The position numbers and the translations under genes are program-made. A model generated the notes under the pieces. The model made no database searches. It was given only the letters and a program-made list of their open reading frames with translations, and was not told the DNA's origin. From the IMG/VR virus record IMGVR_UViG_3300025141_000016, positions 1-64,000 of that record: a stretch of 64,000 nt of DNA, one strand, 5' to 3'. This document shows, piece after piece, positions 122-60,318 of this stretch (its first letter is position 1; every line of letters starts with the position of its first letter).

Positions 122-2050
122 ATGAGCCTTGCTGACCTCGCTGCCGCCGTAGGACGGCGCTCTGTTGACGAAGCGGTTGATGAGAGCGTGGACATAATCA
201 CCTTCATCGAGTCCCAATGGGGACTCGGACTACGGTTGTTTCCCGTCCAGCGTGTGATCTTGAAGGCGCATTATGGGATGCCCCTCGATGACAATGCCGA
301 GGGTTTCCCCCTTGATGGGCCTGTTCCTACGGACCACCCATCTTTTCCTACGGCCTCTTTGGATGAAGACGGGTGCTACCTCTACCGTATCGTTGTTGCC
401 GACTTTCGCCGCGATAACCCACAATACATGACGGAGGCTGGGTATCTCCGGCACTTGTTTGACGAGGGGCGCTGCAACATCCGTGAAGTGGTTGCGGGGG
501 AGCAACGACGGGAGATGGTGCTCTCCGTGGGCCGCCGCTCGGGCAAGACTCTGATCACGTCGTGCATCGTGGCCTACGAGAACTACCGGTTGCTTCTGAA
601 AGGCAACCCCCAGCGGTACTACGGCTCGTCACAGTCGAACGTGATCCAGTTGATCTCGGTTGCAACGGACAAGGACCAAGCGGGGCTCCTTTACCAAGAG
701 GCTGCGGGACACTTCACCAAGTGCGATTTCTTCCGACCTTACATGGCGAACGCCACCCAGTCGTTTGCCACGTTTCAAACGCCCTTTGACATTGACCGGT
801 ATGGTTCCTATGCGGACAACCCCAAAGCCCGGTACAGCCTCAAGGTGACCTTCCGGTCTTGCGTGGCCAAGGGGCTCCGAGGTGGGGCCAACATTCTTGT
901 GGCATTGGATGAGGTGGCTCACTTCGGGGAGAAAGGTCAGGCCAGTGCCGATGAGGTCTACCAAGCCGTTGAGCCGAGCACCCGTACTTTCAGTCCCAAA
1001 GACCCCGCCAACCTCACCCGTCCTACCGGGGAGAACGAGGGTCGAATCATCTTGATCTCATCCCCTCTCGGGAAGCAGGGGCTTTTCTACAAGCAGTTCC
1101 GGCTTGGCTTTGGGAACAACAAGGCTGCCGACAACCTGCTGTGTATCCAAGCGCCGACATGGGAGGTCAACCCGACAGTGCCCGCCGAGACGTTTGTTGC
1201 CTCTTACCTCAAAGATCCCAACGTCTTTTTCACGGAATACGGAGCAGAGTTCACGGACAGGACGCGGGGGTGGATTCCAGATGCGGCGGATCTGCTGGCA
1301 TGTGTGGACCCTACTGCTCGCCCCAGGCTGCGAGGGCCGACCCGTGCTCCTCACTTCATGGGGCTCGACGTGGCTCTGGTGGGTGACTACACCGCTGTAG
1401 CCATTGGCCACAACGAGCCATCGGGTGAGGTGGTCCTCGATCACATTGAGCGGATCCGGGCCGGAGAGGGTGACTTCGTAGGCCAGGAACGTCTGGAGTT
1501 TGATGACGTGGCGGATTGGGTCTACGACTTGTCCCGGCGCTACTACATCACGGATGGGATCTTTGACCAGTGGGCCGGGATCCCGATGGAACAGGCGTTG
1601 AGGAAGCGGGGGCTCTCGACGCTGAAATCGGTTCACCACACTCGGCAGTTATCGAGCCAAATGTTCCAGAACTTCAAGGACATGATGTTTGACAAGAGAC
1701 TGGTCCTCTACAACTGGCCTTTGCCGGAGGGGGAGGACCACTGTGCCTACCTCGCGGAACTGCTTGAACTCCAGGCAGACCACATCAGCAAGTACATCGT
1801 GAAGGTCGAGGCCCCCAACATCGAGGGCAAACACGATGACTTTTCGGATGCCCTTGTTCGGATGGTGTGGAGTGCCACGACCAACTCGACCAAGGTGGTG
1901 AGGATGGTGGGGTCCAAACGGTATAGTGGAGAATCTGTTGCGGTTTCTCGTTTTGGTCGGAAGGCCACGGCACTCAAAGGTCGGAGTGGTTCTCATCCTT
2001 CACGCATGATCCCCAAGGGGGGCCGGGGTTCCGGGGGCACTGGTCGGTAG
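122..2050 (+). CDS. terL: Terminase large subunit
   Basis: Walker A VLSVGRRSGKT, Walker B VALDEVAH, coupling motif ISSP, and RNase H-like nuclease acidic motifs MGLDVA, IFDQW and HDDFSDALV. Lies two genes upstream of the portal. Confidence 0.95.
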   Translation: MSLADLAAAVGRRSVDEAVDESVDIITFIESQWGLGLRLFPVQRVILKAHYGMPLDDNAEGFPLDGPVPTDHPSFPTASLDEDGCYLYRIVVADFRRDNPQYMTEAGYLRHLFDEGRCNIREVVAGEQRREMVLSVGRRSGKTLITSCIVAYENYRLLLKGNPQRYYGSSQSNVIQLISVATDKDQAGLLYQEAAGHFTKCDFFRPYMANATQSFATFQTPFDIDRYGSYADNPKARYSLKVTFRSCVAKGLRGGANILVALDEVAHFGEKGQASADEVYQAVEPSTRTFSPKDPANLTRPTGENEGRIILISSPLGKQGLFYKQFRLGFGNNKAADNLLCIQAPTWEVNPTVPAETFVASYLKDPNVFFTEYGAEFTDRTRGWIPDAADLLACVDPTARPRLRGPTRAPHFMGLDVALVGDYTAVAIGHNEPSGEVVLDHIERIRAGEGDFVGQERLEFDDVADWVYDLSRRYYITDGIFDQWAGIPMEQALRKRGLSTLKSVHHTRQLSSQMFQNFKDMMFDKRLVLYNWPLPEGEDHCAYLAELLELQADHISKYIVKVEAPNIEGKHDDFSDALVRMVWSATTNSTKVVRMVGSKRYSGESVAVSRFGRKATALKGRSGSHPSRMIPKGGRGSGGTGR

Positions 2051-2059
2051 CCCCCCTAT
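2045..2059 (+). promoter_or_regulatory. Late-type motif CGGTAG-N5-CTAT
   Basis: CGGTAG CCCCC CTAT; the TAG is the terL stop codon. Confidence 0.65.
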
Positions 2060-2086
2060 GGGCCAACCCTCGGTAGGAGACTTCAC

Positions 2087-2662
2087 ATGGCTACCTTCGT
2101 TCAAAACTCCTCGCTCCCTGATGCGGGGGATGTAGAGTTGATGTTCCCAGGAGATCGCTTTCCGGTGATCGCTGGTCCCCTATTGCGTGCGTCTGGTTGG
2201 CGCGGTGGTCAGTTCGTCATGTACGCGACGGCGAATGATGACTTCACTGTCGAAGCGAGTGATGGTACGGGAGCGGCAGGGTTTCTACTGTTCCAGTCCG
2301 AGAACTACCAGACGACCCCTCCCACTGGGGCAGGTCCGGGCAGCCCAGAGAACTGGACCTCCCAACAGTTTTTGAACCCACAGGGTGGAAACAACGTCGC
2401 CACGATGGTCAATGGGGGAACACGGGCTTACTTCCGTGTTTTTGAGACGACTGCTCTCGTGGGAGCAGGCACCCGAACGGGTGGGGCTATCACCTATGTC
2501 CTCAATGAAGACCTCAAAATCTCCGAGAACGGGCTTCTGTGCAACGATTCCGACGCGAATCTTATCGCAGCCGGGATCGCCACCCCCATTGTCGTCGGTA
2601 TTGTGTCAGCGATACCTGCTGCTGCCAACGCCAACCGCCTGTGCATGGACATGAAATACTGA
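2087..2662 (+). CDS. Head decoration/cement-like virion protein, paralog of 22685..23323
   Basis: RBS GGAGA upstream. FETTAL...TYVLNEDLKISENGLLCN...VGIVSAIPA aligns by eye with FESQTL...TYTTGEHLYSSMNGYLTN...IGILKMPA of the pre-MCP gene. Confidence 0.55.
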   Translation: MATFVQNSSLPDAGDVELMFPGDRFPVIAGPLLRASGWRGGQFVMYATANDDFTVEASDGTGAAGFLLFQSENYQTTPPTGAGPGSPENWTSQQFLNPQGGNNVATMVNGGTRAYFRVFETTALVGAGTRTGGAITYVLNEDLKISENGLLCNDSDANLIAAGIATPIVVGIVSAIPAAANANRLCMDMKY

Positions 2663-2672
2663 TGAGGATGCT

Positions 2673-2996
2673 TTGAGTCGATACCGCTCCAGTAATGCCC
2701 CCACGGATACTGACCGTCAGATCCAGGCTCTCCTCGACCGCGCCTCCCGCTCGGTAGGGGAGGCGATCCGTCTGGCTTCTTCGGCTCCTGTGGCGGCTGG
2801 TCGTGGGAAACGTCGGGTGTCAGGGGACTTGGAGCGGGCGATGGCAGCCCTCCAGACGGTTCGATATATCGGAGCATCCCCCACAGGCCGCGATGAAATG
2901 AGCGAAGTCGAACTCAATCGCCTCCATCGGGAGCGCCTGTCGAATGAAAGGGCCGAGCGTCGTGCAGCGGTGAAGGAGCAGATCGATGTCGGATAA
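2673..2996 (+). CDS. Hypothetical protein (head cluster)
   Basis: 107-aa ORF with RBS GAGG, overlapping the portal start. Contains an IRLAS motif. Confidence 0.6.
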   Translation: MSRYRSSNAPTDTDRQIQALLDRASRSVGEAIRLASSAPVAAGRGKRRVSGDLERAMAALQTVRYIGASPTGRDEMSEVELNRLHRERLSNERAERRAAVKEQIDVG

Positions 2997-4707
2997 AACG
3001 ACCTCCGGTGACGGTGTTCCTGTTCGCAAGGTCAAGTCTGGCGACGGGAAGCGGAAAGCGAAGACGGGCAAGCCCCGTCGCGTCACTTCCTCCATGATGA
3101 GAGCCCACAATCGCACAGCCAGCTTCTCGTCAAGCATGGGGAACTCCGAGGCTGTTGAAGGGTTTGGCGGCAACTTCTACTCCCCAGAACTATCTACGGA
3201 CTTCTTGGAGTTGCCGCAGAGTCTCCATGAGCAGTGGAACTACTACCGGTTTTTCTACCGGAATGAGCCTTTCGTTGGTCAGGCGGTGGACCTCCACACG
3301 GAACTGCCGATCAGCAAGGTCAGGATCGGGATGGCTCACGCCAAGAATCGTGAGATCGCGACTGCCGCTACCCGTTTTTGCGAGCGTTGGGCGAAGCGCA
3401 TCCATCTCCTCGACAGGCTGTTGGCTATCACCCATGACCGCAACCTCATCGGAGAGGTCTTCGTCTGGTGTGAGGATGCCAATGGGGAGATGCCCCGAGA
3501 GATCCGTGAAGAGGAGCGCCGGACACTGACCGAAGACGGGGAAGTCAATGAGGAGTGGGTTGAGTACGATGACGCAGATGAACGCGCCGTCAAGTGGCTC
3601 AAAAAGAACTACAAGGGGTGGACGAACATGCGTGTTCTGCCCCCCGAACAAGTCCAGATGCAGAGTTTCAACTTCACTGATGAGCGCATCTTTGAACTGA
3701 TCCCTGACAGCAAGACGAAGGACATTGTTGAGAAAGCCCGGATGGGGGACAAAGAAGCTAAACGCATCGTGGAGTCGATGCCTCCCGAGGTCGTCCAGGC
3801 GGTCACGGCGGGAGAGAACATCCCTCTCAACACTGACCCCATGGCAGGGTCATTCATTCATTACGTCGCCAACCGCAAGTCAGACTACGACCCCCGAGGC
3901 CGTTCCATTTTGGAACGCTGTATGCGTGCTCTGGTCTACCGGGACAAGCTGCGGCAGGCGCAGACCAGCATCGCTTCCCGGCACATGACCCCGATTCGGA
4001 TCGTGTCTGGGGATGACCTTGACATAGCGGATGTGGAAGCCTTGCGGGAGCAGGTAGACAACGCTCTGCAAGACCCCGACTACTCGATCATCGCGAACTT
4101 TGAGGTCAGGTGGGAAGAGATGGGTGCTGATCAGCGTCTACTCGATCTCTCGTCCGAATATGACCTCACTGACCGTCAGTTGTACGCTGGGCTCGGTGTG
4201 ACCGAGGGGCTTCTCTCTGGTGAGAGTGCCTACGCCGGGGACCGGATCAACCTTGAAGTCATCAACACGCGGTACATGCTGCTCCGTGAACAACTCCAAG
4301 ACCTCGTTGAAAACTACTTTTTCAAGCCGATGTGTGCTCGCATGGGTTTCGTGGAGGAGGACGAGGACGGAGAGGAGCGCGTGATTGTTCCCACCTTGTC
4401 GTTCACTCGACTGGCCCTGCGGGACAATCGGGACACGTTCGATGCCCTCTACAATCTCTACACCAAGGGCAGCTTGGACGTGGACACCATCTTGGAACTG
4501 CTCAACCTTGACCCCATCGCGGTCAGGGAGCGCATCGAGCGTGACCTGTTCACCGTCAATGACCCCACGTTCAATGAAGTGCTCCGAGGTGTCTACGGAG
4601 ATGCAGGTCGGGCTATCGCGGAGAACTCCAATGCAGCCGAGAAGATTGCCAAGGTGCTTGGCTTGAAGTTTGAGAAGCCCGCCGAGGAAGAGGGCGGCAG
4701 GTTCTAA
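2986..4707 (+). CDS. Portal protein
   Basis: 573 aa, downstream of TerL. Portal-like segments RFFYRNEPFVGQAVDLHTELPIS, YDPRGRSILERC and REQLQDLVENYFFKP. Confidence 0.85.
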   Translation: MSDKTTSGDGVPVRKVKSGDGKRKAKTGKPRRVTSSMMRAHNRTASFSSSMGNSEAVEGFGGNFYSPELSTDFLELPQSLHEQWNYYRFFYRNEPFVGQAVDLHTELPISKVRIGMAHAKNREIATAATRFCERWAKRIHLLDRLLAITHDRNLIGEVFVWCEDANGEMPREIREEERRTLTEDGEVNEEWVEYDDADERAVKWLKKNYKGWTNMRVLPPEQVQMQSFNFTDERIFELIPDSKTKDIVEKARMGDKEAKRIVESMPPEVVQAVTAGENIPLNTDPMAGSFIHYVANRKSDYDPRGRSILERCMRALVYRDKLRQAQTSIASRHMTPIRIVSGDDLDIADVEALREQVDNALQDPDYSIIANFEVRWEEMGADQRLLDLSSEYDLTDRQLYAGLGVTEGLLSGESAYAGDRINLEVINTRYMLLREQLQDLVENYFFKPMCARMGFVEEDEDGEERVIVPTLSFTRLALRDNRDTFDALYNLYTKGSLDVDTILELLNLDPIAVRERIERDLFTVNDPTFNEVLRGVYGDAGRAIAENSNAAEKIAKVLGLKFEKPAEEEGGRF

Positions 4708-4710: not shown

Positions 4711-4725
4711 CGGTAGGAGTCCTAT
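4711..4725 (+). promoter_or_regulatory. Late-type motif
   Basis: CGGTAG GAGTC CTAT. Confidence 0.6.
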
Positions 4726-4754: not shown

Positions 4755-4798
4755 AGGTCGAGGTCGAGGTCGAGGTCGAGGTCGAGGTCGAGGTCGAG
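4755..4798. repeat. Perfect hexanucleotide tandem repeat (AGGTCG)x7
   Basis: Read directly at 4755-4796 plus AG. Lies between a late-type promoter motif (4711) and the RBS AAGGAG (4803). Confidence 0.95.
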
Positions 4799-6041: not shown

Positions 6042-6056
6042 CGGTAGTCCTGCTAT
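6042..6056 (+). promoter_or_regulatory. Late-type motif
   Basis: CGGTAG TCCTG CTAT. Confidence 0.7.
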
Positions 6057-9024: not shown

Positions 9025-9039
9025 CGGTAGTCGGCCTAT
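9025..9039 (+). promoter_or_regulatory. Late-type motif
   Basis: CGGTAG TCGGC CTAT. Confidence 0.7.
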
Positions 9040-14280: not shown

Positions 14281-14780
14281 TGCTGACCCCATCCGCCGTG
14301 CGGGTAGCTGCGAGGGCAGCCTCCTATGAACGAGTGTTTTACAGCCCGACCCCGTTCACGCGATTCCGGGCCGTTTCCCAGAAAGCCCCCACCCTTATGG
14401 GGAAGCCCCAGGGGCTTTGGTACTCGTGTGGTAGTTCGTGGGAGGACTTCACTCGGAATGAGATGGGGGGTTCCCGATTGGGTGCCTACGCCTACCGGAT
14501 CGAGATCAACCCCTCTGTGATGCTCATCATCAAGGACAAGGCTTCCTTCCTGTGGTTTGAGGAGAAATACGGGGTTCCCGCCAAGTTCGGGGGGGAGGCT
14601 ATTGATTGGGGGAGGGTGGCTCAACACTACCCCGGCATCGAAATCTGTCCGTACCGGTCGAAGCAACGAATGGACCACGATTGGTACTATCCATGGGATG
14701 TGGCAAGTGGTTGCATCTGGTCTGGGGTCGCGATCAAGTCGGTGGAAGAAATGTCTTCCCTTGAACGTGGGTCGCGGTAG
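14280..14780 (+). CDS. Uncharacterised protein (KPxGLWYS...WDVASGCIW type, possibly ART-like fold)
   Basis: TGATG coupling to the previous gene. N-terminal SAVRVAARAAS leader, then a compact aromatic-rich domain. Fold assignment is tentative. Confidence 0.6.
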   Translation: MLTPSAVRVAARAASYERVFYSPTPFTRFRAVSQKAPTLMGKPQGLWYSCGSSWEDFTRNEMGGSRLGAYAYRIEINPSVMLIIKDKASFLWFEEKYGVPAKFGGEAIDWGRVAQHYPGIEICPYRSKQRMDHDWYYPWDVASGCIWSGVAIKSVEEMSSLERGSR

Positions 14781-14789
14781 CGAGACTAT
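14775..14789 (+). promoter_or_regulatory. Late-type motif
   Basis: CGGTAG CGAGA CTAT; the TAG is the upstream stop codon. Confidence 0.7.
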
Positions 14790-17800: not shown

Positions 17801-18583
17801 TACCGGGAGAAAATGACCGAGGTGGCTGTTGATGCCATGGACGCTTACCGAACCTTCACCCCGGAGGACCGTGAGACGCATCGCAAGGGGCTGGAAAAGC
17901 ACATCAAGAAAATGACGGAGGGAGGGGACACCGAGTCGGAACAGTACGCCCAAGCCATCTCCCAGATGCGGGGCATGGCGCTTGCGTCAGCCTTGGAAGA
18001 CGGGGACAAGGCCAAGGGGGTCAATCCCACGTTCCAAGCGTTGCTGGTAGGGGCTGACAATGCGGGACGAGTGGAGGAGTTTGCCAGGGTCAACCTTTCC
18101 GGTGCTGCGGAAGGGGATAGTAGTGCCCAGCAAGTATTCCGTGACGTGATGGAAGATACCTCCCATGAAGACATGGCGAAGATGCTTCCAGACGATCATC
18201 CGGCCCAATCTGCCTTGAAGTTGTTGACCGGCTGCCCGTCTGGCGCAGACCCCAACAGTCAGGGGTGCCGGGAACTGGCGAACCTCCCCCAAGATTCCAT
18301 CGACATGCTGAACACGATGGTCAACGATGCGGTGATGGGAGAGGTGCTGTTCACGGATCAAGCCCTGGTATCGGCAGACCCTAACGCCTCGGTCGGGTCC
18401 ATCAAGCAGAAGAAGAAGCAGACCAAGCAGACGGGCAAGGGGAAGTCTTTTGCGGACATGATGGCGGCTTTTCTTGCAAGCCTCAAAGCAGGTAAGAGTG
18501 CCGCGCAGTTGCCCACGGGGATATACGACTTTGATCCTTGGAGGGCATCTATTTCCGGGCAAAGGGATGAGTTCAGCCGGTAG
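14816..18583 (+). CDS. Multi-module protein: HAD phosphatase (RNA-repair SAK type) + DNA topoisomerase IB + ART-like module + acidic helical region
   Basis: HAD: MYDFDGTLFRS...VVVTGR. TopoIB: YERVGN, GKSG, DVNAYL..TAKDIR, VGH, RRQYL. ART-like: YYIG...AVFLT...EVIIP. Confidence 0.85.
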   Translation: MRPKVAKSYNRIAMYDFDGTLFRSWEATPEWWAGSSLDTGPYSFFVRHESLGEPCVPDSPESDYWITKTVAAAKKDSSDRNVFVVVVTGRVRTHKRRVLELLKSKGINPEASYFNPGMSAAKFKVAVLRNLLAGHRMVSAVDVWENENQTYYENALRQAAKKLDREITVTIHSIHVPPKPLVCGPRDFGLSKDASVGRVVAKYQGKKEVPTADGKGTSTVYEYGPRQVAKRHKEKAKRIESLRQKMAELRQQARGDLTSKDPQTRLTALAVCLMDETYERVGNEKSAEEGHHGVTNWTAGHVSLGDKSATVKYTGKSGVKQEKTVTNARVLKALREAMKGKGKGDKILCDGDECDILAKDVNAYLKPFGVTAKDIRGLHANEEMRRRLQEVRKGGPDLPVARKEKDKILKAEFQQALNDAAKAVGHEASTLRRQYLVPTMEETFIHDGTVIDQLAKKAGGSRILYYIGKNKAQPKPKRVNHWKDRGQPEPAWVRPWLDAPVQNAVFLTTNPFGVATNHGVVGHVYAYDVPQWVLKEAKGLHRYDWATEVIIPDVLWKHVKFRGKSMDRQEFDQMIREGQNERSFAQWNRNMGLREKRKPELVGQPVWVTATKSDAEKEEEEDQRLIRQSPKKKPPRRDLERGRVEDTHETDADEDQDRKDRSRNFKDAAAWVALRYAAGAAAAEADDEGSSGGGVSGKFLMFLEEKGGDQVTNPDTGNKVKLKSLKGPKGKELQKREFQKWLDSESDGDAGAEPSGPKPKPKPKPKPTGPSADAKHAESLDKVVGAQQKREDLVAEGEPFDVEAIKATIREEFSAIPGVDPTTIKNTLGSMTLVPPKGSHDTPEMLLEAAVASLTKANGGAVKAFGKKTKIVEKKALEQVTELAGEAAKGLSKSLMPHDLLAVAAHMEAAKDEAVAEILDGRARKDARSKAQFADRVLERIDGDNPPSPEEIAEALVAKRAVGVLDDPTMLYPHKPLTSLSTEPLSFDNPGAEAAYREKMTEVAVDAMDAYRTFTPEDRETHRKGLEKHIKKMTEGGDTESEQYAQAISQMRGMALASALEDGDKAKGVNPTFQALLVGADNAGRVEEFARVNLSGAAEGDSSAQQVFRDVMEDTSHEDMAKMLPDDHPAQSALKLLTGCPSGADPNSQGCRELANLPQDSIDMLNTMVNDAVMGEVLFTDQALVSADPNASVGSIKQKKKQTKQTGKGKSFADMMAAFLASLKAGKSAAQLPTGIYDFDPWRASISGQRDEFSR

Positions 18584-18592
18584 CCCGTCTAT
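18578..18592 (+). promoter_or_regulatory. Late-type motif
   Basis: CGGTAG CCCGT CTAT; the TAG is the upstream stop codon. Confidence 0.7.
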
Positions 18593-19075: not shown

Positions 19076-19609
19076 TTGCGCCGTAACGCCGTAAATAATG
19101 TCAACTGGCAGCAGCGAGCCCTCGCCTTTCAGGTTGGGGACGTTGTGGGGCCGTTTGGCCTATTCGATGCACAGTCGGGCCGCGTCACAGCGGTTTGGCC
19201 TGCCATCGGTATGGTTGATGTGGAGATGGCCTCGGGCAACAAGCGGTATCCAGTCGAAGACCTCCAGCGATTTGACAGTGAGGGTGATTCAGAACCCCCC
19301 TACACTGACTCTGCCCCAGGTGGGCAGCCCACAGTACAGGTGCCCGGTGGCCCCGTTGACAAGTCGGCGGCTCGGGTGGCATATGCCTATCGCAAGGCAA
19401 TCTACTGGGCTGACAAGGACCGACAGTACAGGGCCAACCGAGATGAAATGGCCTCGGGCCAGCCTGGATGCCCTCGTTGTGAAGAACAGCCCCATCTCCG
19501 ACGGGCAGTCTACAAGCGACGTGATGGCAGCAGTGAACGTCTCCTGGGATGCCCAGGTTGCATGTTCCTCATCAAGAGATCCGACATTATGAACCTTGGC
19601 GGCGAGTAA
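19076..19609 (+). CDS. SH3-like + zinc-ribbon head-cluster protein
   Basis: FQVGDVV..GRVTAVWP..VDVE; linker SAARVAYAYRKA; CPRC...CPGC. Confidence 0.65.
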   Translation: MRRNAVNNVNWQQRALAFQVGDVVGPFGLFDAQSGRVTAVWPAIGMVDVEMASGNKRYPVEDLQRFDSEGDSEPPYTDSAPGGQPTVQVPGGPVDKSAARVAYAYRKAIYWADKDRQYRANRDEMASGQPGCPRCEEQPHLRRAVYKRRDGSSERLLGCPGCMFLIKRSDIMNLGGE

Positions 19610-22496: not shown

Positions 22497-22684
22497 ACGT
22501 CGGGGGGGAGGACTTTCCCTCTTTCCGGGTCGATTTACCCTGGGGGTTCAATAGGCCGCCTATACCCACCCCCTATGTGTAGGCGGAAACGTCTTTCATG
22601 GTCGTAGCGGTAATCGTTGCGGCTTTTACAAACCCTCGCCCCTGTAAACAGGGAGCACAAGCCCCCCCTCATTAGGAGATCATC

Positions 22685-26861: not shown

Positions 26862-26876
26862 CGGTAGATTCCCTAT
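26862..26876 (+). promoter_or_regulatory. Late-type motif
   Basis: CGGTAG ATTCC CTAT. Confidence 0.7.
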
Positions 26877-26906: not shown

Positions 26907-27446
26907 ATGCGACACACCTTGTTCGCTCTGATCTTATTCGTTTCTGCTCTCTCTGCTCCTGTGGCCTACGCCCAGGAAGGGGCACCCCCCGATGCGGTGG
27001 AGGTTTCTGACGAGGCCAAGGTCGAGGCCGAGGAAGCAGCCGCAGAGAACCAACCCGCTATTGAGGCTTCGGATGAGGCTTCGGATGAGGCTCCCACGGA
27101 AGGTGAGGCACCATCCGAGGAAGACCTTGAAGCTACGGCAGATAGCACCAGTATGCTGGTCCAGGCTCTCCAGAACAAACAGTGGGGCCTTGCCATCGGC
27201 ATGATGCTCTGTCTCCTCGTTGCTTTTGCCAATAAGTTTGGCATGAAGGACAAGGTGGGGTCCAAGGCTGTGCCCTGGGTCACCTCCGGTATCGCGGTTG
27301 CAGGCGCAATCGGCGCGGCTCTGATGAGTGGCGTGGCGATCACCGAGGCTCTGACGCAGGGGCTTGTAGCCGGTATGACGGCTATTGGTGGATGGGAGAT
27401 GGTGCTGAAACACATCTTCAAGAAGAACGAATCGGCCTCCAGTTAG
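26907..27446 (+). CDS. Signal-peptide membrane protein (holin-like or envelope protein)
   Basis: N-terminal signal ending AYA, acidic linker and 3-4 hydrophobic helices. RBS AAGGAGG. Confidence 0.6.
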   Translation: MRHTLFALILFVSALSAPVAYAQEGAPPDAVEVSDEAKVEAEEAAAENQPAIEASDEASDEAPTEGEAPSEEDLEATADSTSMLVQALQNKQWGLAIGMMLCLLVAFANKFGMKDKVGSKAVPWVTSGIAVAGAIGAALMSGVAITEALTQGLVAGMTAIGGWEMVLKHIFKKNESASS

Positions 27447-28575: not shown

Positions 28576-28688
28576 GGTGCATCTCCAATGTGAGCCGGGG
28601 TGGCTCACAGGTATGGGGACGGTATCGGCAGTCTACCGATACTCCCTCTATCGACGCACACCCGGTAGATTCCCTGGAGTGAGCCCGC

Positions 28689-34390: not shown

Positions 34391-34405
34391 ATAGGCTTCC
34401 TACCT
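34391..34405 (-). promoter_or_regulatory. Late-type motif variant on the minus strand
   Basis: AGGTAG GAAGC CTAT upstream of GTG 34352; the TAG is the upstream stop codon. Confidence 0.5.
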
Positions 34406-37745: not shown

Positions 37746-37756
37746 CCCCTTGTGGT

Positions 37757-38720: not shown

Positions 38721-38761
38721 CCCCCCTACGGCAAATCAGTTGAAATCAGTCGGGGTGTTGT

Positions 38762-38776
38762 CGGTGGCCCGTCTAT
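38762..38776 (+). promoter_or_regulatory. Late-type motif
   Basis: CGGTGG CCCGT CTAT. Confidence 0.65.
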
Positions 38777-46869: not shown

Positions 46870-46911
46870 TGCCCCCGCACGTCCCGGTGATCTGTCGATA
46901 CGCAGAGGTAA

Positions 46912-47636: not shown

Positions 47637-48698
47637 ATGGCATTGATTTGGTCCTGGGGAGTAGGCGAAGAATCCCCAACTTTGTTGGAGTCTATGGGCT
47701 TCGACTGTAGCAGCACGAGCACGAACAGTATTGAGCCGAGGCAGACCTATCAGTACAGGCCGTCTGGCGGTGCTGCTCGGTGGTCTTGGGCACTTGACCA
47801 CAACGCCTGGGTCACCCCTCCCGTTGGCGCGAAGCCTACCAATGCGATGGGGTGCCTAACCACTGCTTTTTTCGCGGAGCCGGGAACTGGTCCTTGGAAC
47901 AACACCACCTTATTGAACATATACGGGGGAAACAGCGGTAGGAACATCTATGTTCAGGTCACATCGGGAGGGGCGCTGAAGCTGTTTGTGGACAACACCT
48001 ACAAAGCTACTTCGACTTCGACGTGGCAGTGGAGTGGGCAGTGGCACCAAGTCACCCTGAAGTACGATATGAGTGCGGACCCGTGGAAGGGAAGCGTCTG
48101 GGTCGATGGCGTACAGGCCATCGCAGAGCAAACTGATGCGCGTGTTGCGGAACCCAGCGGGGCCACCATCTCCTTCACCATGGGCCAGGGTTTCGTCAAC
48201 GCGGACAGGGCAACCTACATCGGCCAGTGCATCATTTATGACAACTACACGGACCCGGCTGAAAATGTGCGCTTCGTGAGCCGCATCGCACCAGACACCG
48301 ACAGCAGCACGACCGGTACATGGGCCTCCACTGGTCCCAACAACCATTCGGTGCTGGGGTCAGACCCCTTTGACGCGGCTACCTACACCGAGAACTCGGG
48401 GCCTCCCTCTGCGGGAGATGATGTGATCACCACTTTCGCGGGAAACCTGGGAGTCGCCTTGGGCGGGGTGCCGCCATCGGTGGATGGGGTCACGGTTCAT
48501 TCGTTCAGCACAGGACTTGCCAACACGGCGAGAGCCGAGGTCGGAGATCAAGCAGGGGCCACAACGACTCCAGGGGTTACCAGCACCATGTCGAACACGA
48601 CCACCTACGCCACGGCCACGGCACCGACGAAGCCCAGCGGAGGGGCGTGGACCGCTACAGACACCCCGAAAGCGAAATATGAGATCATAAGTGTCTGA
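47637..48698 (+). CDS. ConA/LamG-like structural protein
   Basis: RBS AGGAGG. QWHQVTLKYD..VWVDG pattern. Confidence 0.65.
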   Translation: MALIWSWGVGEESPTLLESMGFDCSSTSTNSIEPRQTYQYRPSGGAARWSWALDHNAWVTPPVGAKPTNAMGCLTTAFFAEPGTGPWNNTTLLNIYGGNSGRNIYVQVTSGGALKLFVDNTYKATSTSTWQWSGQWHQVTLKYDMSADPWKGSVWVDGVQAIAEQTDARVAEPSGATISFTMGQGFVNADRATYIGQCIIYDNYTDPAENVRFVSRIAPDTDSSTTGTWASTGPNNHSVLGSDPFDAATYTENSGPPSAGDDVITTFAGNLGVALGGVPPSVDGVTVHSFSTGLANTARAEVGDQAGATTTPGVTSTMSNTTTYATATAPTKPSGGAWTATDTPKAKYEIISV

Positions 48699-52714: not shown

Positions 52715-52715
52715 G

Positions 52716-52730
52716 CGGTGGGTATCCTAT
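52716..52730 (+). promoter_or_regulatory. Late-type motif
   Basis: CGGTGG GTATC CTAT. Confidence 0.65.
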
Positions 52731-55700: not shown

Positions 55701-58700
55701 TGTGATTTTCCCACTGGGTCGGCACAGGCACACCTGGGAGGAGGTATTGCGGGGCTCATCGCGGATGTGGCCGAGGTCGCTCCTTTCCCAGCCCAAAGCG
55801 CCCTCCTCCTCCCCGCAACCGAGAAAGGGGTTCTCTTTTGGGGAAGTGTGTCCCGTCGGGCCACGTCCACTTCGATCTGGGATCTGACCCAATACTCCGT
55901 CACCCCTGCCCTACAGAAGTATACGGCACAGGGCATCACGGCTCTCACCGAGATGGGAACGCTGCCCCAGGATGACCCGAACGATCCTTGGTACATCATA
56001 GGAGACTTCGGCTACGCAGAGGTGGATGCCAGTGGTGACCATGTGCTTCTCAAAAGCACTTCCGGGGACACCTCCATCCCCTTGCAGTTTGCCTACGAGC
56101 GAGTTGAGCCCTTCCTGACCTCCAAGGTCAGGACTGATTCGGAGGCTACCTTCAGGGTGGAGTCCGGCATTCTGGGGGCTGGAGATGCCACCTTCCGCCT
56201 CCGAGATGGGCAACGAGAAGTCCTCGTCAACACGCTGATTTATCTCCAGACAGGGGGGAACCCCAACGAGTTGCTTCCTGTGCGGCCCAACGTCTCTCTG
56301 TCGGGGCTCCAGGCACCCGCGAGTGCGGGATGGTTGGCATCGAACATCAACTCGGTTCCCAACCCCTTTGTGCGTGGGCAAACCCTCCAGTTCACCAAAG
56401 CCACGGGGCAGGTGGCCGAGTGGACCAACACAGGAGTTGATCCACTCCCCTATGTGGATGAGGGGGCGATCATCGAGGGAAGGTTCTCGGTCGAGAGCCA
56501 TACCGTTGGGAGCTACGGGATCGGTATCGCTTTGGGGGGTAGCTTCCGTCTTCCAGCCAGCGTAGTAGAGCGCAAAGTAGTTCTGACCCTGGGCACAGGC
56601 ACCGTTGATCTACGGGACCGCGACGGTGTGTTGGTACAGTCCTTTGCTTATGCCTGGGACGACAAAGCAGCCCACACTTATCGGGTGCTGTGTGATCCTG
56701 TCGCAGACCTCGTGGTCCTTGTCATTGATGATGTGGTGGTTGGCTCAACCCCGATGGTGGGGTTCTCCCAGCTTGCCGTGGAAGCCCCCAACATTTACCT
56801 CACGGGCTTCCTGGGCTTCCTGGGGACGGGTGCGTGTGCGGTCACCCTTGGTTCCTTCCATGTGGTGCCTCTCCGGGCCGTAGCCCCAACAGGGACGAAG
56901 CTGGTTCGCACTTTCGGCGTGCTCCTCCGTGGAGGGGACGACACTGACCTTGACTCGTACCGCATCCCGCGTACAGACGGGACGACTCTCCCGAACTCCA
57001 ACCCCGCCGTCACGGTGGAGGAGATGGACTGGCGCGATCACTGTCGGGTTCGGGCTTTCCTTGACCCCACATGGGGCGTGTCGGTCTATCGACCGGATCT
57101 TCCGTTGCCCCCAGGGGCCTCCGAGGACTTCATCACAGAGACGACAGATCCATCGGCGGCTTGGATCAATGTCGAGTATCGCGATCTCCCGTCCTATGAG
57201 GCAGCCCGTGGATCAGTAACCTTTGGGGCACTCAACCGTAAAGCCATCACCCAGCAAAGATGGGCTTCGGTTCGTTACCGGATTCGGGGAGCCGCAGATG
57301 GCTTCGGGGTCGCCCCGCAAGGGATGGTCCTCAACCAAGCCGTCACGCTGACCTCCGGCGAGTACAACCTCGATGCCACCCCAGAGACAAGGGTGATCAC
57401 ATCGAGGTCACCGTACTCTGTCTACATCCCAGACAGTGCCATCTACGCTGATCGGGTGTTCGTCGTCCAAGTGGATGGGAGCATCGTTGCACCGGCAGAT
57501 TGGGACTTCGACAGTGATACGCAGTATCTAAAGTTTCAGTCCACGAGCCCTCTCCCTTCCGATGAGCACGCCGTCACCGTCACCTTTGTCGTCGGGAAGC
57601 CTGTCACCAAGACCTATCTCTGCTCCCAGCCCATTGATGAGTCGGTCACGGTGCTCAACGAGGGAACTCCCCCCATCCCGACGGGTCGGGATGAGGCTGT
57701 TACTCGTGCGGTGGAGGCAGGCAGCGAGATCAATGACCCAGCGGATGTGCTGGACTCTGCGGAGTCAATGGTCCTCAATGACCCGTACCGCGTTGTCACC
57801 TTCACCGAAACGGAAGAGTCCCTTTACGCGGACCTCCAGTTTTGTGAGACGGAAGACGGGGAGAGTGTCCATCTCTCCACCATCTGCGATGGTCCGGGTC
57901 CGGGTGCAGGGCTCTCCCACATCGGGATAGACGGCCATTTCACTGTCGATGACTTCACCGTCCCCGAAGGCCCAGCCGGTCCTTGGGGTGGGTCTTCCCC
58001 CGTCTTCAAGGGATCGTCCACGCACTTCGACCCTGCTACGGTTCTCGTCGCGTCAGGCGGGTTCGTCCTGGGAGGGAACCTCGGGCCGGGTACGGCGATT
58101 TTGTACCCCAACCAGCGCGGTCCTTCCGGGCTGCCGCCCGAGGGGGGGATGGGGATCAATCAAGATTTCGTCCTGCGTCTGGAGGATGTGACTCCCCGCG
58201 AGGAAGACCTCGCCATCCAGACTCTCCTCGGGGACAACGTACCTCCCACCTACGCTGACCCCACGATAGATCCGAACCCCGATGGAGTCCCTACGGGGAA
58301 CGGCCACGGGGCTTGCGCCTATACGATGGTGGACCGCGCTACCGTGAATGTCTCGCGTCTGGGACCATGGGGTGCCAACACATGGTTCGGGGTGGTCACT
58401 GTTCTCAACAATGCTGCCATCGTGGCAGGGGACACCATCACCTTCTCGGGCCTTCCCCTTACTGCTTCTGCGGCCCCTGGAACAGACGAGTTTCTGATTG
58501 GGGCCGATGCTGCGGAGACGGTGGCAAACATCCGAGATGCGGTCAACGACACCTCAAACAGTTTTGTGGGCCTGTGCCATGCCCAAGTAGATGCACCCCC
58601 TACGACCAATCAAGTGAGTATTTCATCGGCACGAGAGCTTACCTTCGCCCTAAGCAACGGGGTTGCTTTCCAACCCAACCCTGCGACCGGGTTTTTCAGC

Positions 58701-58820
58701 AAACGGTCCCTCCTGGGAGGGGGCGCACAACTGGACGGGTTCCAGTTCATTCTCGTTGGCGGCAGCCAACTTCCCACCACTACCGTTGTGACCAGCGGGT
58801 ACATCAGATCCGCCAACTGA
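52779..58820 (+). CDS. Large baseplate wedge/tail structural protein
   Basis: 2013 aa, TTG start with RBS AAGGAG. GYGGxxYGxSPYG repeats, Ig-like DITPPRV..VFFSEEM and lectin-like segments. Exact role uncertain. Confidence 0.65.
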   Translation: MPVYLPGLTFGGLGYGGASYGYSPYGSGVHPRLPVPTTGGYGGAPYGFSSYGSVDITPPRVTGVQALDGYRAEVFFSEEMANNAALVAAGSYTFVAAHGVAITAVSVAKGTSGSHGGYTSVIVTHTGSTLGGQYTLTVAGPTDIAGNPVGPPPTDSAAFYAFGDTATVAASLPSPDDGRTVRLDFTNSLGAAQALLTEAEFTPGVDATASYGISTSYPVAPFIGSATQDPATLSRVDLDVHPMTSTTYTVTAGPSLAYKYQGLLLPDDDPTFTGVEIGTGTSVATTTHGLLLTKGAAVQYGWGFGDTTGRMITGTTFQAGFTFDPTSATITPAVLNSTLATLSVSDGVVQINLTLSDSGGVKVIGISSGAYTASVAAAWDTGEHSVVLIRNQRGTFYTVLFDGEPLHTFSSTTPGLGPAADPAGTAFVLSPAHSVSLFKLKRVGLTATTTLFTSAWNFIHGLPVSFTGSDVLTGDRIKTHYGPLVRGWGDATPATKEDVEVRLDGGTIEIAGVNPYVGEIYPVPPIPLAAGPMAASGTIEIGPGQPVAGAAQITVNSVTLQEGVGVGWANGVSITATATAIAAAVVAHCGCQAVGVGNVVEITALSTGVAGNLIGLANTSGDPNVVVSGVFLAGGVDGFAVEVDYIWFVNPAMEMSGLNTRGLTLNTWDRAVGHTAGDVSPLPDGSTGTTKTNRFPMGVALGPYERKSPKRIAHKYIGWQMDYSALTNQPTTLLLNQNPHAISVGALSVDALSDIGIYDGQVSPPNAPTPWQLDGVDTGHSMGDGTYSLVDASTGPYGIGTAAFYKREADLSITTSVTDTARFRVVSYVADGVFTGVALGLHDGAHLVLVGALVIDGVSHVGVLLDATKAHLEEGWEVGPSVTGTGTSQTTFTVPYADLPSGIESGDRFRIASGTQAGVYTIAECGLDLDSDTLDVEVTITTSFPANVTEYGSGSFKVYFETPWATDLISFRLYCDFPTGSAQAHLGGGIAGLIADVAEVAPFPAQSALLLPATEKGVLFWGSVSRRATSTSIWDLTQYSVTPALQKYTAQGITALTEMGTLPQDDPNDPWYIIGDFGYAEVDASGDHVLLKSTSGDTSIPLQFAYERVEPFLTSKVRTDSEATFRVESGILGAGDATFRLRDGQREVLVNTLIYLQTGGNPNELLPVRPNVSLSGLQAPASAGWLASNINSVPNPFVRGQTLQFTKATGQVAEWTNTGVDPLPYVDEGAIIEGRFSVESHTVGSYGIGIALGGSFRLPASVVERKVVLTLGTGTVDLRDRDGVLVQSFAYAWDDKAAHTYRVLCDPVADLVVLVIDDVVVGSTPMVGFSQLAVEAPNIYLTGFLGFLGTGACAVTLGSFHVVPLRAVAPTGTKLVRTFGVLLRGGDDTDLDSYRIPRTDGTTLPNSNPAVTVEEMDWRDHCRVRAFLDPTWGVSVYRPDLPLPPGASEDFITETTDPSAAWINVEYRDLPSYEAARGSVTFGALNRKAITQQRWASVRYRIRGAADGFGVAPQGMVLNQAVTLTSGEYNLDATPETRVITSRSPYSVYIPDSAIYADRVFVVQVDGSIVAPADWDFDSDTQYLKFQSTSPLPSDEHAVTVTFVVGKPVTKTYLCSQPIDESVTVLNEGTPPIPTGRDEAVTRAVEAGSEINDPADVLDSAESMVLNDPYRVVTFTETEESLYADLQFCETEDGESVHLSTICDGPGPGAGLSHIGIDGHFTVDDFTVPEGPAGPWGGSSPVFKGSSTHFDPATVLVASGGFVLGGNLGPGTAILYPNQRGPSGLPPEGGMGINQDFVLRLEDVTPREEDLAIQTLLGDNVPPTYADPTIDPNPDGVPTGNGHGACAYTMVDRATVNVSRLGPWGANTWFGVVTVLNNAAIVAGDTITFSGLPLTASAAPGTDEFLIGADAAETVANIRDAVNDTSNSFVGLCHAQVDAPPTTNQVSISSARELTFALSNGVAFQPNPATGFFSKRSLLGGGAQLDGFQFILVGGSQLPTTTVVTSGYIRSAN

Positions 58821-59637: not shown

Positions 59638-59699
59638 GGATGTTCCTTCCTTTTACTTTATCGGTTCCTGGCTTTCTTCCGGGCTTTCCGGCGTTGGGA

Positions 59700-60203
59700 T
59701 CAGTTGCCTTTGCTGGGGAGGGGCCTTTGTTGAGCCCCTTCGCTGTGGGGGGTGGAAACCACATCTCTGCCGTAGAAGTATCCGATAGGGATCATCGCGG
59801 TTTCCCACGATGCACTGTCGGGGTATCTCGGATCGAAGTCATCAGGGACGAAGGTGAAGAGGTGGTACTGGTTGCAGGAGTCCACAAGCCTGGATTCAGC
59901 GGGGAAAATCTGGATGGACTCGGCCTCGGGATGCACAAGTTCATTCTTGATGCGCTGGAAGTCGCGGAAATCCGTGATAGCGAGGTTGGAAACATGGCGG
60001 ATGGACAGATGAATGATGCGGGGGAACCCCGGACTCTGTTTCCTGGGGGGGTAGACATGGACGATATATCGACTGTTGCGGAAGACCGGAGCCCTCATCT
60101 CATCGGTACTTCTCCCGCCTGGAACCCATGGGGTCCACTCGTCTTCTTTGAGACGAACTTCAAGCCCGTCTTGGACGGATACGGTGGCGGTAGGCTTTCC
60201 CAT
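59700..60203 (-). CDS. Conserved phage protein (HLSI..FQRIKNEL..FPAESRLVD..NQYHL type)
   Basis: Recognisable widespread phage motif of unknown function. RBS AGGAG. Confidence 0.75.
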   Translation of the reverse strand: MGKPTATVSVQDGLEVRLKEDEWTPWVPGGRSTDEMRAPVFRNSRYIVHVYPPRKQSPGFPRIIHLSIRHVSNLAITDFRDFQRIKNELVHPEAESIQIFPAESRLVDSCNQYHLFTFVPDDFDPRYPDSASWETAMIPIGYFYGRDVVSTPHSEGAQQRPLPSKGN

Positions 60204-60230
60204 GATTCTCCTAAAGGGTCGGGGTGTAGC

Positions 60231-60259
60231 CCTATACGGAGAAGCACGGGGGAGTTGAA
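60231..60259 (-). promoter_or_regulatory. Sigma70-like early promoter, copy 3: TTCAAC-N17-TATAGG
   Basis: Minus strand GGGGGGTTCAACTCCCCCGTGCTTCTCCGTATAGG, upstream of ATG 60203. Confidence 0.7.
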
Positions 60260-60303
60260 CCCCCCTGGGAGCAAAAAGTTGAGGGGGGGTGGACTCTCCC
60301 CGT

Positions 60304-60318
60304 CGGTAGCCCCTCTAT
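60304..60318 (+). promoter_or_regulatory. Late-type motif
   Basis: CGGTAG CCCCT CTAT. Confidence 0.7.

What the first reader, a model, noticed from the sequence alone, without database searches (positions are those of the whole stretch)
2045..60318. Phage-specific late promoter candidate CGGT(A/G)G-N5-CTAT with fixed spacing
Seen: 10 copies with an invariant 5-nt spacer at 2045, 4711, 6042, 9025, 14775, 18578, 26862, 38762, 52716 and 60304. All lie at gene boundaries directly upstream of + strand genes. Variants occur at 34391 (minus), 28624 (minus, CGAT), 28637, 22549 and 46885. In several copies the TAG doubles as the upstream stop codon. A rough uniform-base expectation is below one copy in the window, though I did not exhaustively scan coding regions. 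TAG-N5-CTA is a dyad, and the GG-N10-AT geometry matches the GG-N10-GC spacing of sigma54 promoters (TGGCAC-N5-TTGC) with a different sequence. Inference: recognised by a phage-encoded sigma factor or RNAP, possibly sigma54-like.
Basis: partly seen in the sequence, partly recalled or inferred. Interest (0 to 1): 0.7.

Follow-up and report, generated by a model that had tools for sequence, protein, structure and literature searches.

The report
Clade-specific late promoter of marine jumbo phages
The repeated CGGTAG-N5-CTAT signal is real and is very probably the promoter that switches on the head, tail and other later genes of an uncultured marine giant phage. Its shape resembles sigma-54 promoters, but no sigma-54 machinery is present.

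Summary
There are 10 exact copies in the window against 0.25 expected, all on the + strand, and 28 in the 297-kb phage record. A weight matrix finds about 55 sites. They are almost all intergenic, co-oriented with the next gene, and end 22-48 nt before its start codon. The 5-nt gap is strict.

Three related contigs (67-75% nucleotide identity in shared genes) carry the same motif upstream of orthologous genes (Fisher p of 1e-6 to 1e-10). It is often the only conserved element in divergent intergenic regions. It heads operons for major head protein, protease, virion proteins, tail sheath and baseplate.

Two other promoter-like classes serve small-gene clusters and replication genes. The motif is therefore best read as a phage-specific late (partly middle) promoter.

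Shine-Dalgarno positions force any start site into the roughly 15 nt after CTAT. However, the -12 GC of sigma-54 promoters is replaced by an invariant AT. I found no sigma-54, enhancer-binding ATPase or multisubunit RNA polymerase gene; the single-subunit polymerase search was uninformative.

The phage encodes a divergent ECF-like sigma with a novel N-terminal domain, and a tandem sigma-region-4 protein next to a NusG-like gene. Which of these reads the motif is unresolved. No RNA data were available.

The parts
2045..2059 (+). Class-B promoter core CGGTAGCCCCCCTAT. Its TAG is the stop of the terminase large-subunit gene (122-2050). It lies 27 nt upstream of the ATG at 2087, in the operon leading to the portal gene (2986-4707).
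   Evidence: orthologous sites in G001 and G002
4711..4725 (+). Class-B core CGGTAGGAGTCCTAT just after the portal gene stop. It is followed by an AGGTCG x7 tandem repeat (4755-4798) and ORF 4734/4818-5834.
6042..6056 (+). Class-B core CGGTAGTCCTGCTAT, 40 nt upstream of the ATG at 6097. The downstream block GGGTAGACAC is conserved in the orthologous G001 and G002 sites.
9025..9039 (+). Class-B core CGGTAGTCGGCCTAT, 28 nt upstream of the ATG at 9068.
14775..14789 (+). Class-B core CGGTAGCGAGACTAT. Its TAG is the stop of 14280-14780. It lies 26 nt upstream of the 1255-aa gene 14816-18583.
18578..18592 (+). Class-B core CGGTAGCCCGTCTAT. Its TAG is the stop of the 1255-aa gene. It heads the operon with the prohead protease (19609-21045) and an acidic-repeat scaffold-like protein (21055-22431).
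   Evidence: (site conserved in G001, G002, G003)
22549..22563 (+). Variant core CAATAGGCCGCCTAT (PWM 15.4) in the 254-nt gap ahead of 22685-23323 and the major head protein gene 23354-24226.
26862..26876 (+). Class-B core CGGTAGATTCCCTAT, 30 nt upstream of the ATG at 26907.
   Evidence: conserved in G003
28624..28638 (-). Variant core CGGTAGACTGCCGAT on the minus strand, 48 nt upstream of 28375-28575(-). It sits back-to-back with, and overlaps by 2 bp, the + strand variant at 28637.
28637..28651 (+). Variant core CGATACTCCCTCTAT, 37 nt upstream of the GTG at 28689 (642-aa ORF). It forms a divergent pair with the minus-strand copy in a 113-bp intergenic region.
34391..34405 (-). Variant core AGGTAGGAAGCCTAT on the minus strand, 38 nt upstream of 34002-34352(-).
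38762..38776 (+). Class-B core CGGTGGCCCGTCTAT, 40 nt upstream of 38817. Its operon holds virion structural protein 40493-41689 and the 1726-aa gene. It is divergent from a class-A element at 38692-38725(-).
46885..46899 (+). Weak variant CGGTGATCTGTCGAT (PWM 14.4) after the 1726-aa gene and upstream of 46912/46996-47364.
52716..52730 (+). Class-B core CGGTGGGTATCCTAT directly after the virion structural gene 48830-52714 and 48 nt upstream of the 2013-aa gene 52779-58820.
60304..60318 (+). Class-B core CGGTAGCCCCTCTAT, 27 nt upstream of the ATG at 60346 of a gene of more than 1170 aa that runs off the window. It is divergent from a class-A element at 60231-60264(-).
27371..27385 (+). Possible extra site CGGTATGACGGCTAT (PWM 16.4) inside the 3' end of 26907-27446, 77 nt upstream of 27463. 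Its status is uncertain.

Best explanation
The motif is the core of a promoter class specific to this clade of phages, which I call class B. The full element reads C1 G2 G3 T4 A5 G6, a strict 5-nt gap, C12 T13 A14 T15, about 11 unconserved nt, then a G-rich block (G27 G28 G/T T/G A). Transcription most probably starts at or just before that G-rich block. That places CTAT at about -15 to -12 and CGGTAG at about -26 to -21, with no -35 element. The promoter is most likely used by the host multisubunit RNA polymerase after it has been reprogrammed by a phage-encoded sigma-type factor. It turns on the head, virion, tail and baseplate operons and some DNA-metabolism genes. Two other promoter-like classes serve the small-gene (early-looking) clusters and the replication genes. 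The best candidate reader is the phage's divergent ECF-like sigma (record 107568-108488, minus strand, 306 aa). Its sigma-2 part could read the CTAT block and its conserved 75-aa N-terminal domain could read CGGTAG. A tandem sigma-region-4 protein (record 271749-272357) and its NusG-like neighbour are conserved next to the clamp-loader gene and sit at the boundary with the class-B-rich structural genes. They may be co-factors. Shown: the existence, enrichment, orientation, placement and evolutionary conservation of the motif, and the gene classes it precedes.
For: Enrichment, strand bias and intergenic restriction. Strict N5 spacing. In 123 pooled sites T4, A14 and T15 are invariant. The same motif occurs in three related contigs, which share 67-75% nucleotide identity with the record in conserved genes, and it lies upstream of orthologous genes: Fisher p 4.9e-10, 2.8e-6 and 3.6e-9. 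Thirteen of 19 divergent intergenic regions carry a correctly oriented copy, including two back-to-back pairs in 109-113-bp gaps with no other conserved sequence. The 25 nt upstream of the motif carry no information. The downstream genes are structural: the terminase/portal module, the protease, major head protein 23354-24226, virion proteins, tail sheath and baseplate J. Separate promoter-like classes exist. Class A is a T-tract plus GGGGGTTCAAC-N17-TATAGG, with 22 or more copies in small-gene clusters. Class C is GGGGGT-N17/18-GGGTA, upstream of replication genes and conserved in all four genomes. Start-site window: the Shine-Dalgarno to ATG spacing at class-B genes equals that of other genes, and the SD never starts closer to the motif than position 31-32. 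Phage sigma: 20 of 26 family members match Sigma70_r2, the profile hits sigma-H in PDB (E 1e-4), and all top fold matches are sigma factors. Tandem region-4 protein and NusG/KOW neighbour, with synteny conserved next to the clamp loader.
Against: No transcript 5' ends are available: no RNA run was listed and the phage is uncultured. The layout fits no sigma70-family promoter. Nothing is conserved at -35, and the CGGTAG block lies too close to CTAT to be a -35 element. The position equivalent to -7 is not T. No test links any protein to the motif, because the protein-DNA complex job was not folded. The record is estimated to be only 67% complete, so the true reader may be missing. Several giant ORFs have no family match and could hide a polymerase. 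Class B also precedes some non-structural genes, so the timing label is approximate.
Confidence: 0.72

Rival explanations
1. The motif is the binding site of a phage DNA-binding regulator, an activator or repressor such as the tandem helix-turn-helix (sigma-region-4 x2) protein. It would sit at a fixed place next to a weak, unrecognisable core promoter, and would not be read by a sigma factor. Two recognition helices would contact CGGTAG and CTAT one helical turn apart.
For: There are two conserved blocks whose centres are 10 bp apart, with strict spacing and a 3-bp dyad. The 202-aa protein has two sigma70_r4-type HTH domains with near-invariant recognition helices. Its gene lies at the boundary with the class-B-rich structural genes.
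Against: In the 485-kb relative LR745208 both recognition helices of this protein are identical. Yet the motif is not enriched there: 10 matches against 9 in the control, and none of quality in 40 kb around the gene. Orientation dependence and the fixed distance to start codons mean the motif still behaves as part of the promoter.
Confidence: 0.12
2. The motif is a promoter for a phage-encoded RNA polymerase that the searches missed. Such an enzyme could be a very divergent single-subunit or two-barrel polymerase hidden in one of the giant ORFs, or encoded on the missing third of the genome.
For: The promoter is long, rigid and highly conserved, and is followed by a conserved G-rich start block, as in T7-like promoters. 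The PF00940 search was uninformative because its control rang nowhere. ORFs of 3818, 2013, 1888 and 1778 aa have no functional family match. The record is estimated to be 67% complete.
Against: No beta or beta' Pfam match, with controls positive. No convincing DxDGD catalytic motif in any of the four proteomes; the single NADFDGD is in a low-complexity protein without homologues. The 11 unconserved nt between CTAT and the start block are unlike T7-type promoters, which are conserved up to +1. The phage does encode sigma-type factors, which only make sense with a host core enzyme.
Confidence: 0.07
3. The motif is an ops-like loading or pause signal read on the non-template strand of elongating polymerase by the phage's NusG-family protein. 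It would be an antitermination or translation-coupling signal, not a promoter.
For: CGGTAG is identical to bases C3-G8 of the E. coli ops element GGCGGTAGCGTG. Those are the bases required for RfaH recruitment (PMC5995543). Positions 9-10 of the motif are weakly Y-G, like ops T11-G12. The phage encodes a conserved NGN/KOW protein.
Against: The ops flanking GG is absent at positions -1 and 0, and the invariant CTAT has no counterpart in ops. Back-to-back divergent pairs leave 9 bp or less for upstream promoters, and nothing upstream of the motif is conserved. One ops per operon suffices in known systems, whereas here there are about 55 sites, one per short operon.
Confidence: 0.04
4. The motif acts at the RNA level as a processing site, a stabiliser or a translation signal in polycistronic transcripts.
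For: It sits at gene boundaries within co-directional arrays, is usually not preceded by terminators, and lies at a fixed distance from start codons.
Against: It is present as the sole conserved element in divergent regions, where transcripts must begin. I found no conserved secondary structure and no obvious compensatory changes in the spacer by eye. The strict duplex-like two-block architecture is typical of protein-DNA recognition.
Confidence: 0.03
5. These are genuine sigma54-dependent promoters, read by host sigma54 or by a phage sigma54-like protein.
For: GG at the inferred -25/-24, a strict 5-nt gap and a start about 12 nt after the second block match the sigma54 layout TGGCAC-N5-TTGC (the consensus is from general knowledge).
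Against: The -13/-12 GC is replaced by an invariant AT. No Sigma54_DBD and no Sigma54_activat ATPase is encoded in the record, with controls positive. About 55 enhancer-dependent promoters without an activator gene is implausible.
Confidence: 0.02

Closest known systems
Sigma54 (-24/-12) promoters, TGGCAC-N5-TTGC (general knowledge)
   Same: Both have two short blocks separated by a strict 5-nt gap and a GG in the upstream block. Both blocks lie directly upstream of the inferred start, at about -25/-24 and -13/-12, and there is no -35 element.
   Different: The -12 GC is an invariant AT, and the other positions differ. The phage record encodes no sigma54 DNA-binding domain and no AAA+ enhancer-binding activator.
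T4-type late promoters (TATAAATA read by gp55 with gp33 and the gp45 sliding clamp; review PMC2988020)
   Same: Both are phage-specific late promoters without a -35 element, placed in short gaps inside co-directional gene arrays. A split or partial sigma apparatus is plausible. The region-4-like gene is conserved next to the clamp-loader gene, with the clamp gene about 7 kb upstream.
   Different: The sequence is unrelated and there is an additional upstream block. Homology to gp55 or gp33 was not shown, and clamp dependence was not tested.
Promoters read by phage-encoded sigma factors, such as SPO1 gp28 and gp33/34 or phiEco32 gp36 (general knowledge)
   Same: A phage-encoded sigma70-family protein exists here, and a distinct consensus marks later genes.
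   Different: The known examples keep a -35/-10 or an extended -10 layout. Here the upstream block lies only 5 bp from the CTAT block. In this phage it is class C, not class B, that has the canonical 17-18-bp spacing.
E. coli ops element GGCGGTAGCGTG, the RfaH recruitment site (PMC5995543)
   Same: The six central bases CGGTAG are identical, and a NusG-family gene is present in the phage.
   Different: The ops flanks are not conserved here. An invariant CTAT block is added. The placement indicates a promoter rather than a transcribed leader element.
T4 middle promoters (MotA box plus sigma70 -10, sigma appropriation; general knowledge)
   Same: A phage-specific upstream box replaces the -35 element, and a phage protein with sigma-region-4-like features could replace or remodel region 4.
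   Different: The MotA box is centred near -30 with a normal -10. Here the box abuts the proximal block. No MotA or AsiA homologues were sought or found.

Membership tests
Sigma54-dependent promoter | Conserved GG at -24/-25 and GC at -12/-13 with a fixed 5-nt gap between the TGGCAC and TTGC blocks | tested here: not met
   The spacing is strict and GG is conserved. The positions equivalent to GC are A14 and T15, invariant in 123 sites.
Sigma54-dependent promoter | A sigma54 protein (RpoN box) is available | tested here: not met
   PF04552 gave no match at E<=1 in the 297-kb record, with controls positive. The host is unknown and the record is about 67% complete, so host sigma54 cannot be excluded.
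Sigma54-dependent promoter | An AAA+ enhancer-binding activator (Sigma54_activat) | tested here: not met
   PF00158 gave no match in the record, while the control rang in 14 of 14 genomes.
Sigma54-dependent promoter | Start site about 11-12 nt downstream of the -12 block | not testable with these tools
   No RNA run was listed. Indirectly, Shine-Dalgarno positions confine the start to within about 15 nt after CTAT, and a G-rich block sits 12 nt after it.
Sigma70-family (-35/-10) promoter | A -35 element 16-18 bp upstream of a -10 element | tested here: not met
   There is no information content in the 25 nt upstream of the motif. CGGTAG lies only 5 bp from CTAT. Classes A and C of the same phage do show 17-18-bp spacing.
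Sigma70-family (-35/-10) promoter | A -10 element with T-12, A-11 and T-7 | tested here: inconclusive
   T13 A14 T15 could be -12 to -10. The position equivalent to -7 (position 18) is T in only 14 of 123 sites.
T7-like single-subunit RNAP promoter | A phage single-subunit RNAP gene, and a contiguous conserved block running to +1 | tested here: inconclusive
   PF00940 gave no match, but its control rang nowhere. The 11 nt before the putative start are unconserved, unlike T7-type promoters.
Jumbo-phage multisubunit RNAP promoters (phiKZ/AR9 type) | Phage-encoded beta and beta'-like subunits | tested here: not met
   PF00562 and PF00623 gave no match, with controls 14 of 14. No credible DxDGD motif. 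Very divergent subunits could still escape these models.
ops / RfaH-type recruitment element | The 12-nt GGCGGTAGnnTG on the non-template strand of a transcribed leader, downstream of a promoter | tested here: not met
   The core CGGTAG matches. The flanking GG is absent and TG is only weakly present. Divergent back-to-back pairs leave no room for upstream promoters.
T4-type late promoter system | A -10-only TATAAATA box read by gp55 with gp33 and the sliding clamp | not tested
   The sequence differs. The clamp, clamp loader and a region-4-like protein are encoded in the same gene cluster. No gp55 or gp33 homology search was run and no functional test was possible.

The most novel reading that the evidence does not exclude
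A sigma70-family (ECF-like) phage sigma has acquired a new N-terminal DNA-reading domain and so recognises a promoter with sigma54-like -24/-12 geometry and no -35 element. It would do this without sigma54 or an enhancer-binding ATPase. This would be the late switch of a large, widespread clade of uncultured marine jumbo phages. The switch would work together with a conserved clamp-loader, NusG-like and tandem-region-4 gene module.
Probability: 0.18. Interest if true: 0.75.

Novelty: new variant of a known kind. Interest (0 to 1): 0.5.

Why it matters
If the reading is right, sequence alone gives the transcription programme of an uncultured clade of marine jumbo phages. Each of the two sigma-like proteins has hundreds to more than 1,100 homologues in metagenomes. 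The programme has three promoter classes, an inferred early, middle and late order, and candidate regulators. The late class has a two-block layout hugging the start site, known so far only from sigma54, yet without sigma54 machinery. It could therefore reveal a new way for a sigma70-type factor or a co-factor to position RNA polymerase. In practice the motif is a precise marker for operon starts and late genes when annotating these genomes. It is also a ready template for in vitro work.

Tried and rejected
- **RNA evidence.** No RNA run was listed for the window, and the 24 holders are marine DNA metagenomes. No start-site mapping was possible.
- **Cultured or annotated relatives.** None found except the unannotated LR745208.
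- **Protein-DNA complex.** The prediction of the tandem region-4 protein with a site was not folded by the tool. It is no evidence either way.
- **Terminators upstream of the motif.** Folding energies of the 47 nt upstream equal those of other genes (p=0.85). Only a few sites, for example record 280099 and 285768, follow a terminator-like hairpin.
- **GGGTA block as the -10, with the motif as a -35 substitute.** Rejected, because the Shine-Dalgarno sequence would then lie upstream of the start at most sites and no forbidden zone is seen. Class C does show such a zone.
- **Reversed-sequence control for one-mismatch counts.** It is inflated by codon bias (21 hits), so I relied on intergenic versus in-ORF counts instead.
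- **Weak Sigma70_r2 hit.** It failed a single-sequence Pfam scan but was confirmed at family level.
- **Giant ORFs and the sigma N-terminal domain.** PHROGs on four giant ORFs gave no functional assignment, only two weak hits to families of unknown function. The Atlas search on the sigma N-terminal domain gave nothing useful.
- **NADFDGD string.** The one found in G001 is a chance match in a low-complexity protein.
- **Moraphage paper (PMC12619734).** It concerns a different, Bacteroidota-infecting lineage.

Full report
**Observation.** The pattern CGGTRG-N5-CTAT occurs 10 times in the window at exactly the reported coordinates, all on the + strand. Dinucleotide shuffles expect 0.25. The window is the first 64 kb of a 297,104-bp IMG/VR virus record with 59% G+C and a CheckV completeness estimate of 67%. 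The record carries 28 exact copies, 27 of them on the + strand. With my own codon-bias gene caller (293 genes, 92% coding), all 25 CGGTAG-N5-CTAT copies are intergenic, as are 24 of the 29 one-mismatch copies. Most end 22-48 nt before a start codon on the same strand. At 12 of 53 sites in the record the motif TAG is the stop codon of the upstream gene.

**Anatomy.** An iterated weight matrix finds 71 hits at 12 bits or more, against 7 in the reversed control. Of these, 53 are intergenic and within 120 nt of a co-oriented start. The 13 in-ORF hits are roughly what the control predicts. I pooled 123 non-identical sites from this record and three relatives. In that set T4, A14 and T15 are invariant, C1, G2, A5, C12 and T13 exceed 91%, G3 is 90% and G6 is 82%. 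The five spacer positions and the 25 nt upstream carry almost no information. The gap is strictly 5 nt. About 11 nt after CTAT lies a weaker G-rich block (G27 G28 G/T T/G A). It persists in the 40 sites whose start codon is 38 nt or more away, so it is not merely the ribosome-binding site. It is also conserved between orthologous sites while the intervening bases change.

**Conservation.** Using the acidic-repeat protein next to the prohead protease as a probe, I found three large related viral contigs, G001-G003. They share 67-75% nucleotide identity with the record in conserved genes. They carry 27, 19 and 25 copies of GGTRG-N5-CTAT, against 0-1 in controls, again intergenic and co-oriented. 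Reciprocal-best-hit orthologues share the presence or absence of the motif far more often than chance: Fisher p 4.9e-10, 2.8e-6 and 3.6e-9. Good copies also occur near homologues of the phage sigma that are only 47-50% identical (L053, L056), and in a contig whose region-4 protein is 63% identical (L050). The phage is from marine metagenomes. No RNA run was listed and no cultured relative exists.

**Why a promoter.**

- Of 19 divergent intergenic regions in the record, 13 contain a correctly oriented class-B copy. Two gaps of 109 and 113 bp (record 226946-227056 and window 28575-28689) consist essentially of two back-to-back copies plus the two leaders. That leaves no room and no conserved sequence for other promoters.
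- The remaining divergent regions mostly carry a second repeated element, class A. It is a T-tract followed by GGGGGTTCAAC-N17-TATAGG, a sigma70-like -35/-10 layout with 22 or more copies. It is confined to clusters of small genes and was found only in this record. In the window it lies at 37716-37749(-), 38692-38725(-) and 60231-60264(-).
- A third element, class C (GGGGGT-N17/18-GGGTA), is conserved in all four genomes. It precedes the replication and recombination genes at 252-269 kb: Dda-like helicase, UvsX-like recombinase, exonuclease, sliding clamp and clamp loader.
- Class B precedes the structural genes. These are the terminase/portal module, the protease operon, the major head protein (23354-24226), virion proteins (40493-41689 and 48830-52714), the tail sheath (record 280221) and the baseplate J operon (record 99199).
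- Class B also precedes a UvrD-like helicase and a HAD RNA-repair protein.

The simplest reading is a three-class temporal programme in which class B is late, partly middle.

**Where transcription would start.** At class-B genes the GGAG to ATG spacing has the same distribution as at other genes, with a mode of 6 nt. These are therefore ordinary ribosome-binding sites that must be transcribed. Their first base is never closer to the motif than position 31-32, and beyond that the distribution is continuous. A start site must therefore lie between CTAT (position 15) and about position 30, most plausibly at the conserved G27/G28. That places CTAT at about -15 to -12 and the GG of CGGTAG at about -25/-24.

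I considered the alternative that GGGTA is a -10 element, as it appears to be in class C. I rejected it for class B because most ribosome-binding sites would then be untranscribed. Class C does show the expected empty zone between GGGTA and the ribosome-binding site, whereas class B does not.

**Who reads it.** The record has no match to RNAP beta or beta' families, to the sigma54 DNA-binding domain or to the sigma54 activator ATPase, with positive controls in each case. The single-subunit RNAP search was uninformative. Catalytic-motif scanning and PHROG scans of the giant ORFs gave no functional assignment.

Two sigma-type proteins are present.

- **The 306-aa sigma (record 107568-108488, minus strand).** It belongs to a family of about 590 metagenomic proteins. 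Twenty of 26 sampled members match Sigma70_r2 and two match region 4. The family profile hits sigma-H in PDB (E 1e-4). The AlphaFold model (pLDDT 80) matches only sigma factors over about 185 columns. It also has a conserved 75-aa beta-rich N-terminal domain of unknown fold.
- **The 202-aa tandem region-4 protein (record 271749-272357).** It belongs to a family of about 1,100 proteins and has two sigma70 region-4 helix-turn-helix domains. It always lies after a clamp-loader gene and a NusG/KOW-like gene, and its gene is immediately followed by class-B sites.

One comparison bears on the choice between them. The 485-kb relative LR745208 has a region-4 protein with identical recognition helices. 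It shows no enrichment of the motif: 10 matches against 9 in the control, and none of quality near the gene. Its sigma homologue is 244 aa and lacks the N-terminal domain. This single contrast argues against the tandem region-4 protein as the sequence reader. It points weakly to the 306-aa sigma, perhaps through its extra domain. This is inference only. The protein-DNA complex job was not folded.

**Rivals.**

- An activator-site reading differs mainly in which protein touches the DNA.
- An undetected phage polymerase cannot be excluded, because the record is incomplete.
- The ops idea arose because CGGTAG equals the RfaH-contact core of GGCGGTAGCGTG (PMC5995543) and the phage has a NusG-like gene. 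The ops flanks are not conserved, CTAT has no ops counterpart, and the divergent pairs leave no space for upstream promoters.
- An RNA-level role is unlikely for the same positional reasons.
- A true sigma54 promoter fails on the invariant AT at -13/-12 and on the missing sigma54 and activator genes.

**Verdict.** 'Late' is approximately right. 'Sigma54-like' is right for layout and wrong for membership. The reader of the motif is unresolved. The case is a new variant of a familiar kind, the phage-specific late promoter. Its unusual layout and the conserved sigma, NusG-like and clamp-loader gene context make it a worthwhile in vitro target.

Noticed in passing
window 37716-37749(-), 38692-38725(-), 60231-60264(-); record 94-119 kb and 175-211 kb: A second, longer repeated element (class A) has 22 or more copies. 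It is a T-tract followed by GGGGGTTCAAC-N17-TATAGG(AGTG), upstream of clusters of small genes. The layout is sigma70-like. The G-run and C-run around TTCAAC could also pair as a hairpin, with apparent compensatory changes by eye. It was found only in this record and not in the three relatives.
   Followed up: partly
record 252-269 kb and elsewhere, e.g. G000:C1:262869-262897 and 255333-255361: A third promoter-like class (class C) reads GGGGGT-N17/18-GGGTA. It has canonical -35/-10 spacing, is conserved in all four related genomes and lies upstream of replication and recombination genes. The ribosome-binding sites respect a gap consistent with GGGTA being a -10 element.
   Followed up: partly
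record 107568-108488 (-) = L010:7568-8488: A divergent ECF-like sigma factor of 306 aa carries a conserved 75-aa N-terminal beta-rich domain of unknown fold. Single-sequence Pfam misses it, and about 590 homologues exist in metagenomes.
   Followed up: yes
record 269818-272357 = L048:9818-12357: A conserved gene trio runs clamp loader, NusG/KOW-like protein (182 aa), tandem sigma70-region-4 protein (202 aa). The last protein ends in a conserved hydrophobic tail (W..EPVIY.V). This could be a clamp- or polymerase-binding peptide, but I did not test it.
   Followed up: partly
window 28395-28479: A perfect 12-nt tandem repeat, CCGTATCGGTAT x6.8 (36-nt super-unit x2.4), lies inside or next to the small minus-strand ORF 28375-28575, beside the divergent promoter pair.
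   Followed up: no
window 48705-48851: A 54-nt tandem repeat x2.7 (CAGCCCAACTACAAGGGCTGTT...) lies at or just upstream of the start of the large virion structural gene (ORF 48698-52714; my start call is 48830), downstream of 47694-48698. Its function is unknown.
   Followed up: no
window 4755-4798: AGGTCG x7.3, a perfect hexamer repeat, lies directly downstream of the 4711 promoter copy. It falls in the leader or the N-terminus of ORF 4734/4818-5834.
   Followed up: no
window 35081-35130 (minus-strand leader of 34835-35080): A (CA)n microsatellite of about 11 units follows a GC hairpin, upstream of a small minus-strand gene.
   Followed up: no
window 21055-22431: The protein after the prohead protease is rich in acidic 12-18-nt repeats and is scaffold-like. 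The major head protein is 23354-24226 (phrog_2522, E 1e-54).
   Followed up: partly
window 41689-46869, 52779-58820, 14816-18583; record 155169-166625 (3818 aa): Several giant ORFs of 1255-3818 aa have no informative family match. They lie in class-B operons and are presumably virion or injected proteins.
   Followed up: partly
record ends versus G001 (G001:65651-74450): In the relatives, genes homologous to the record's last 14 kb lie directly upstream of the terminase gene that opens the window. The record is therefore probably a permuted, near-contiguous genome rather than one missing sequence at this junction.
   Followed up: no
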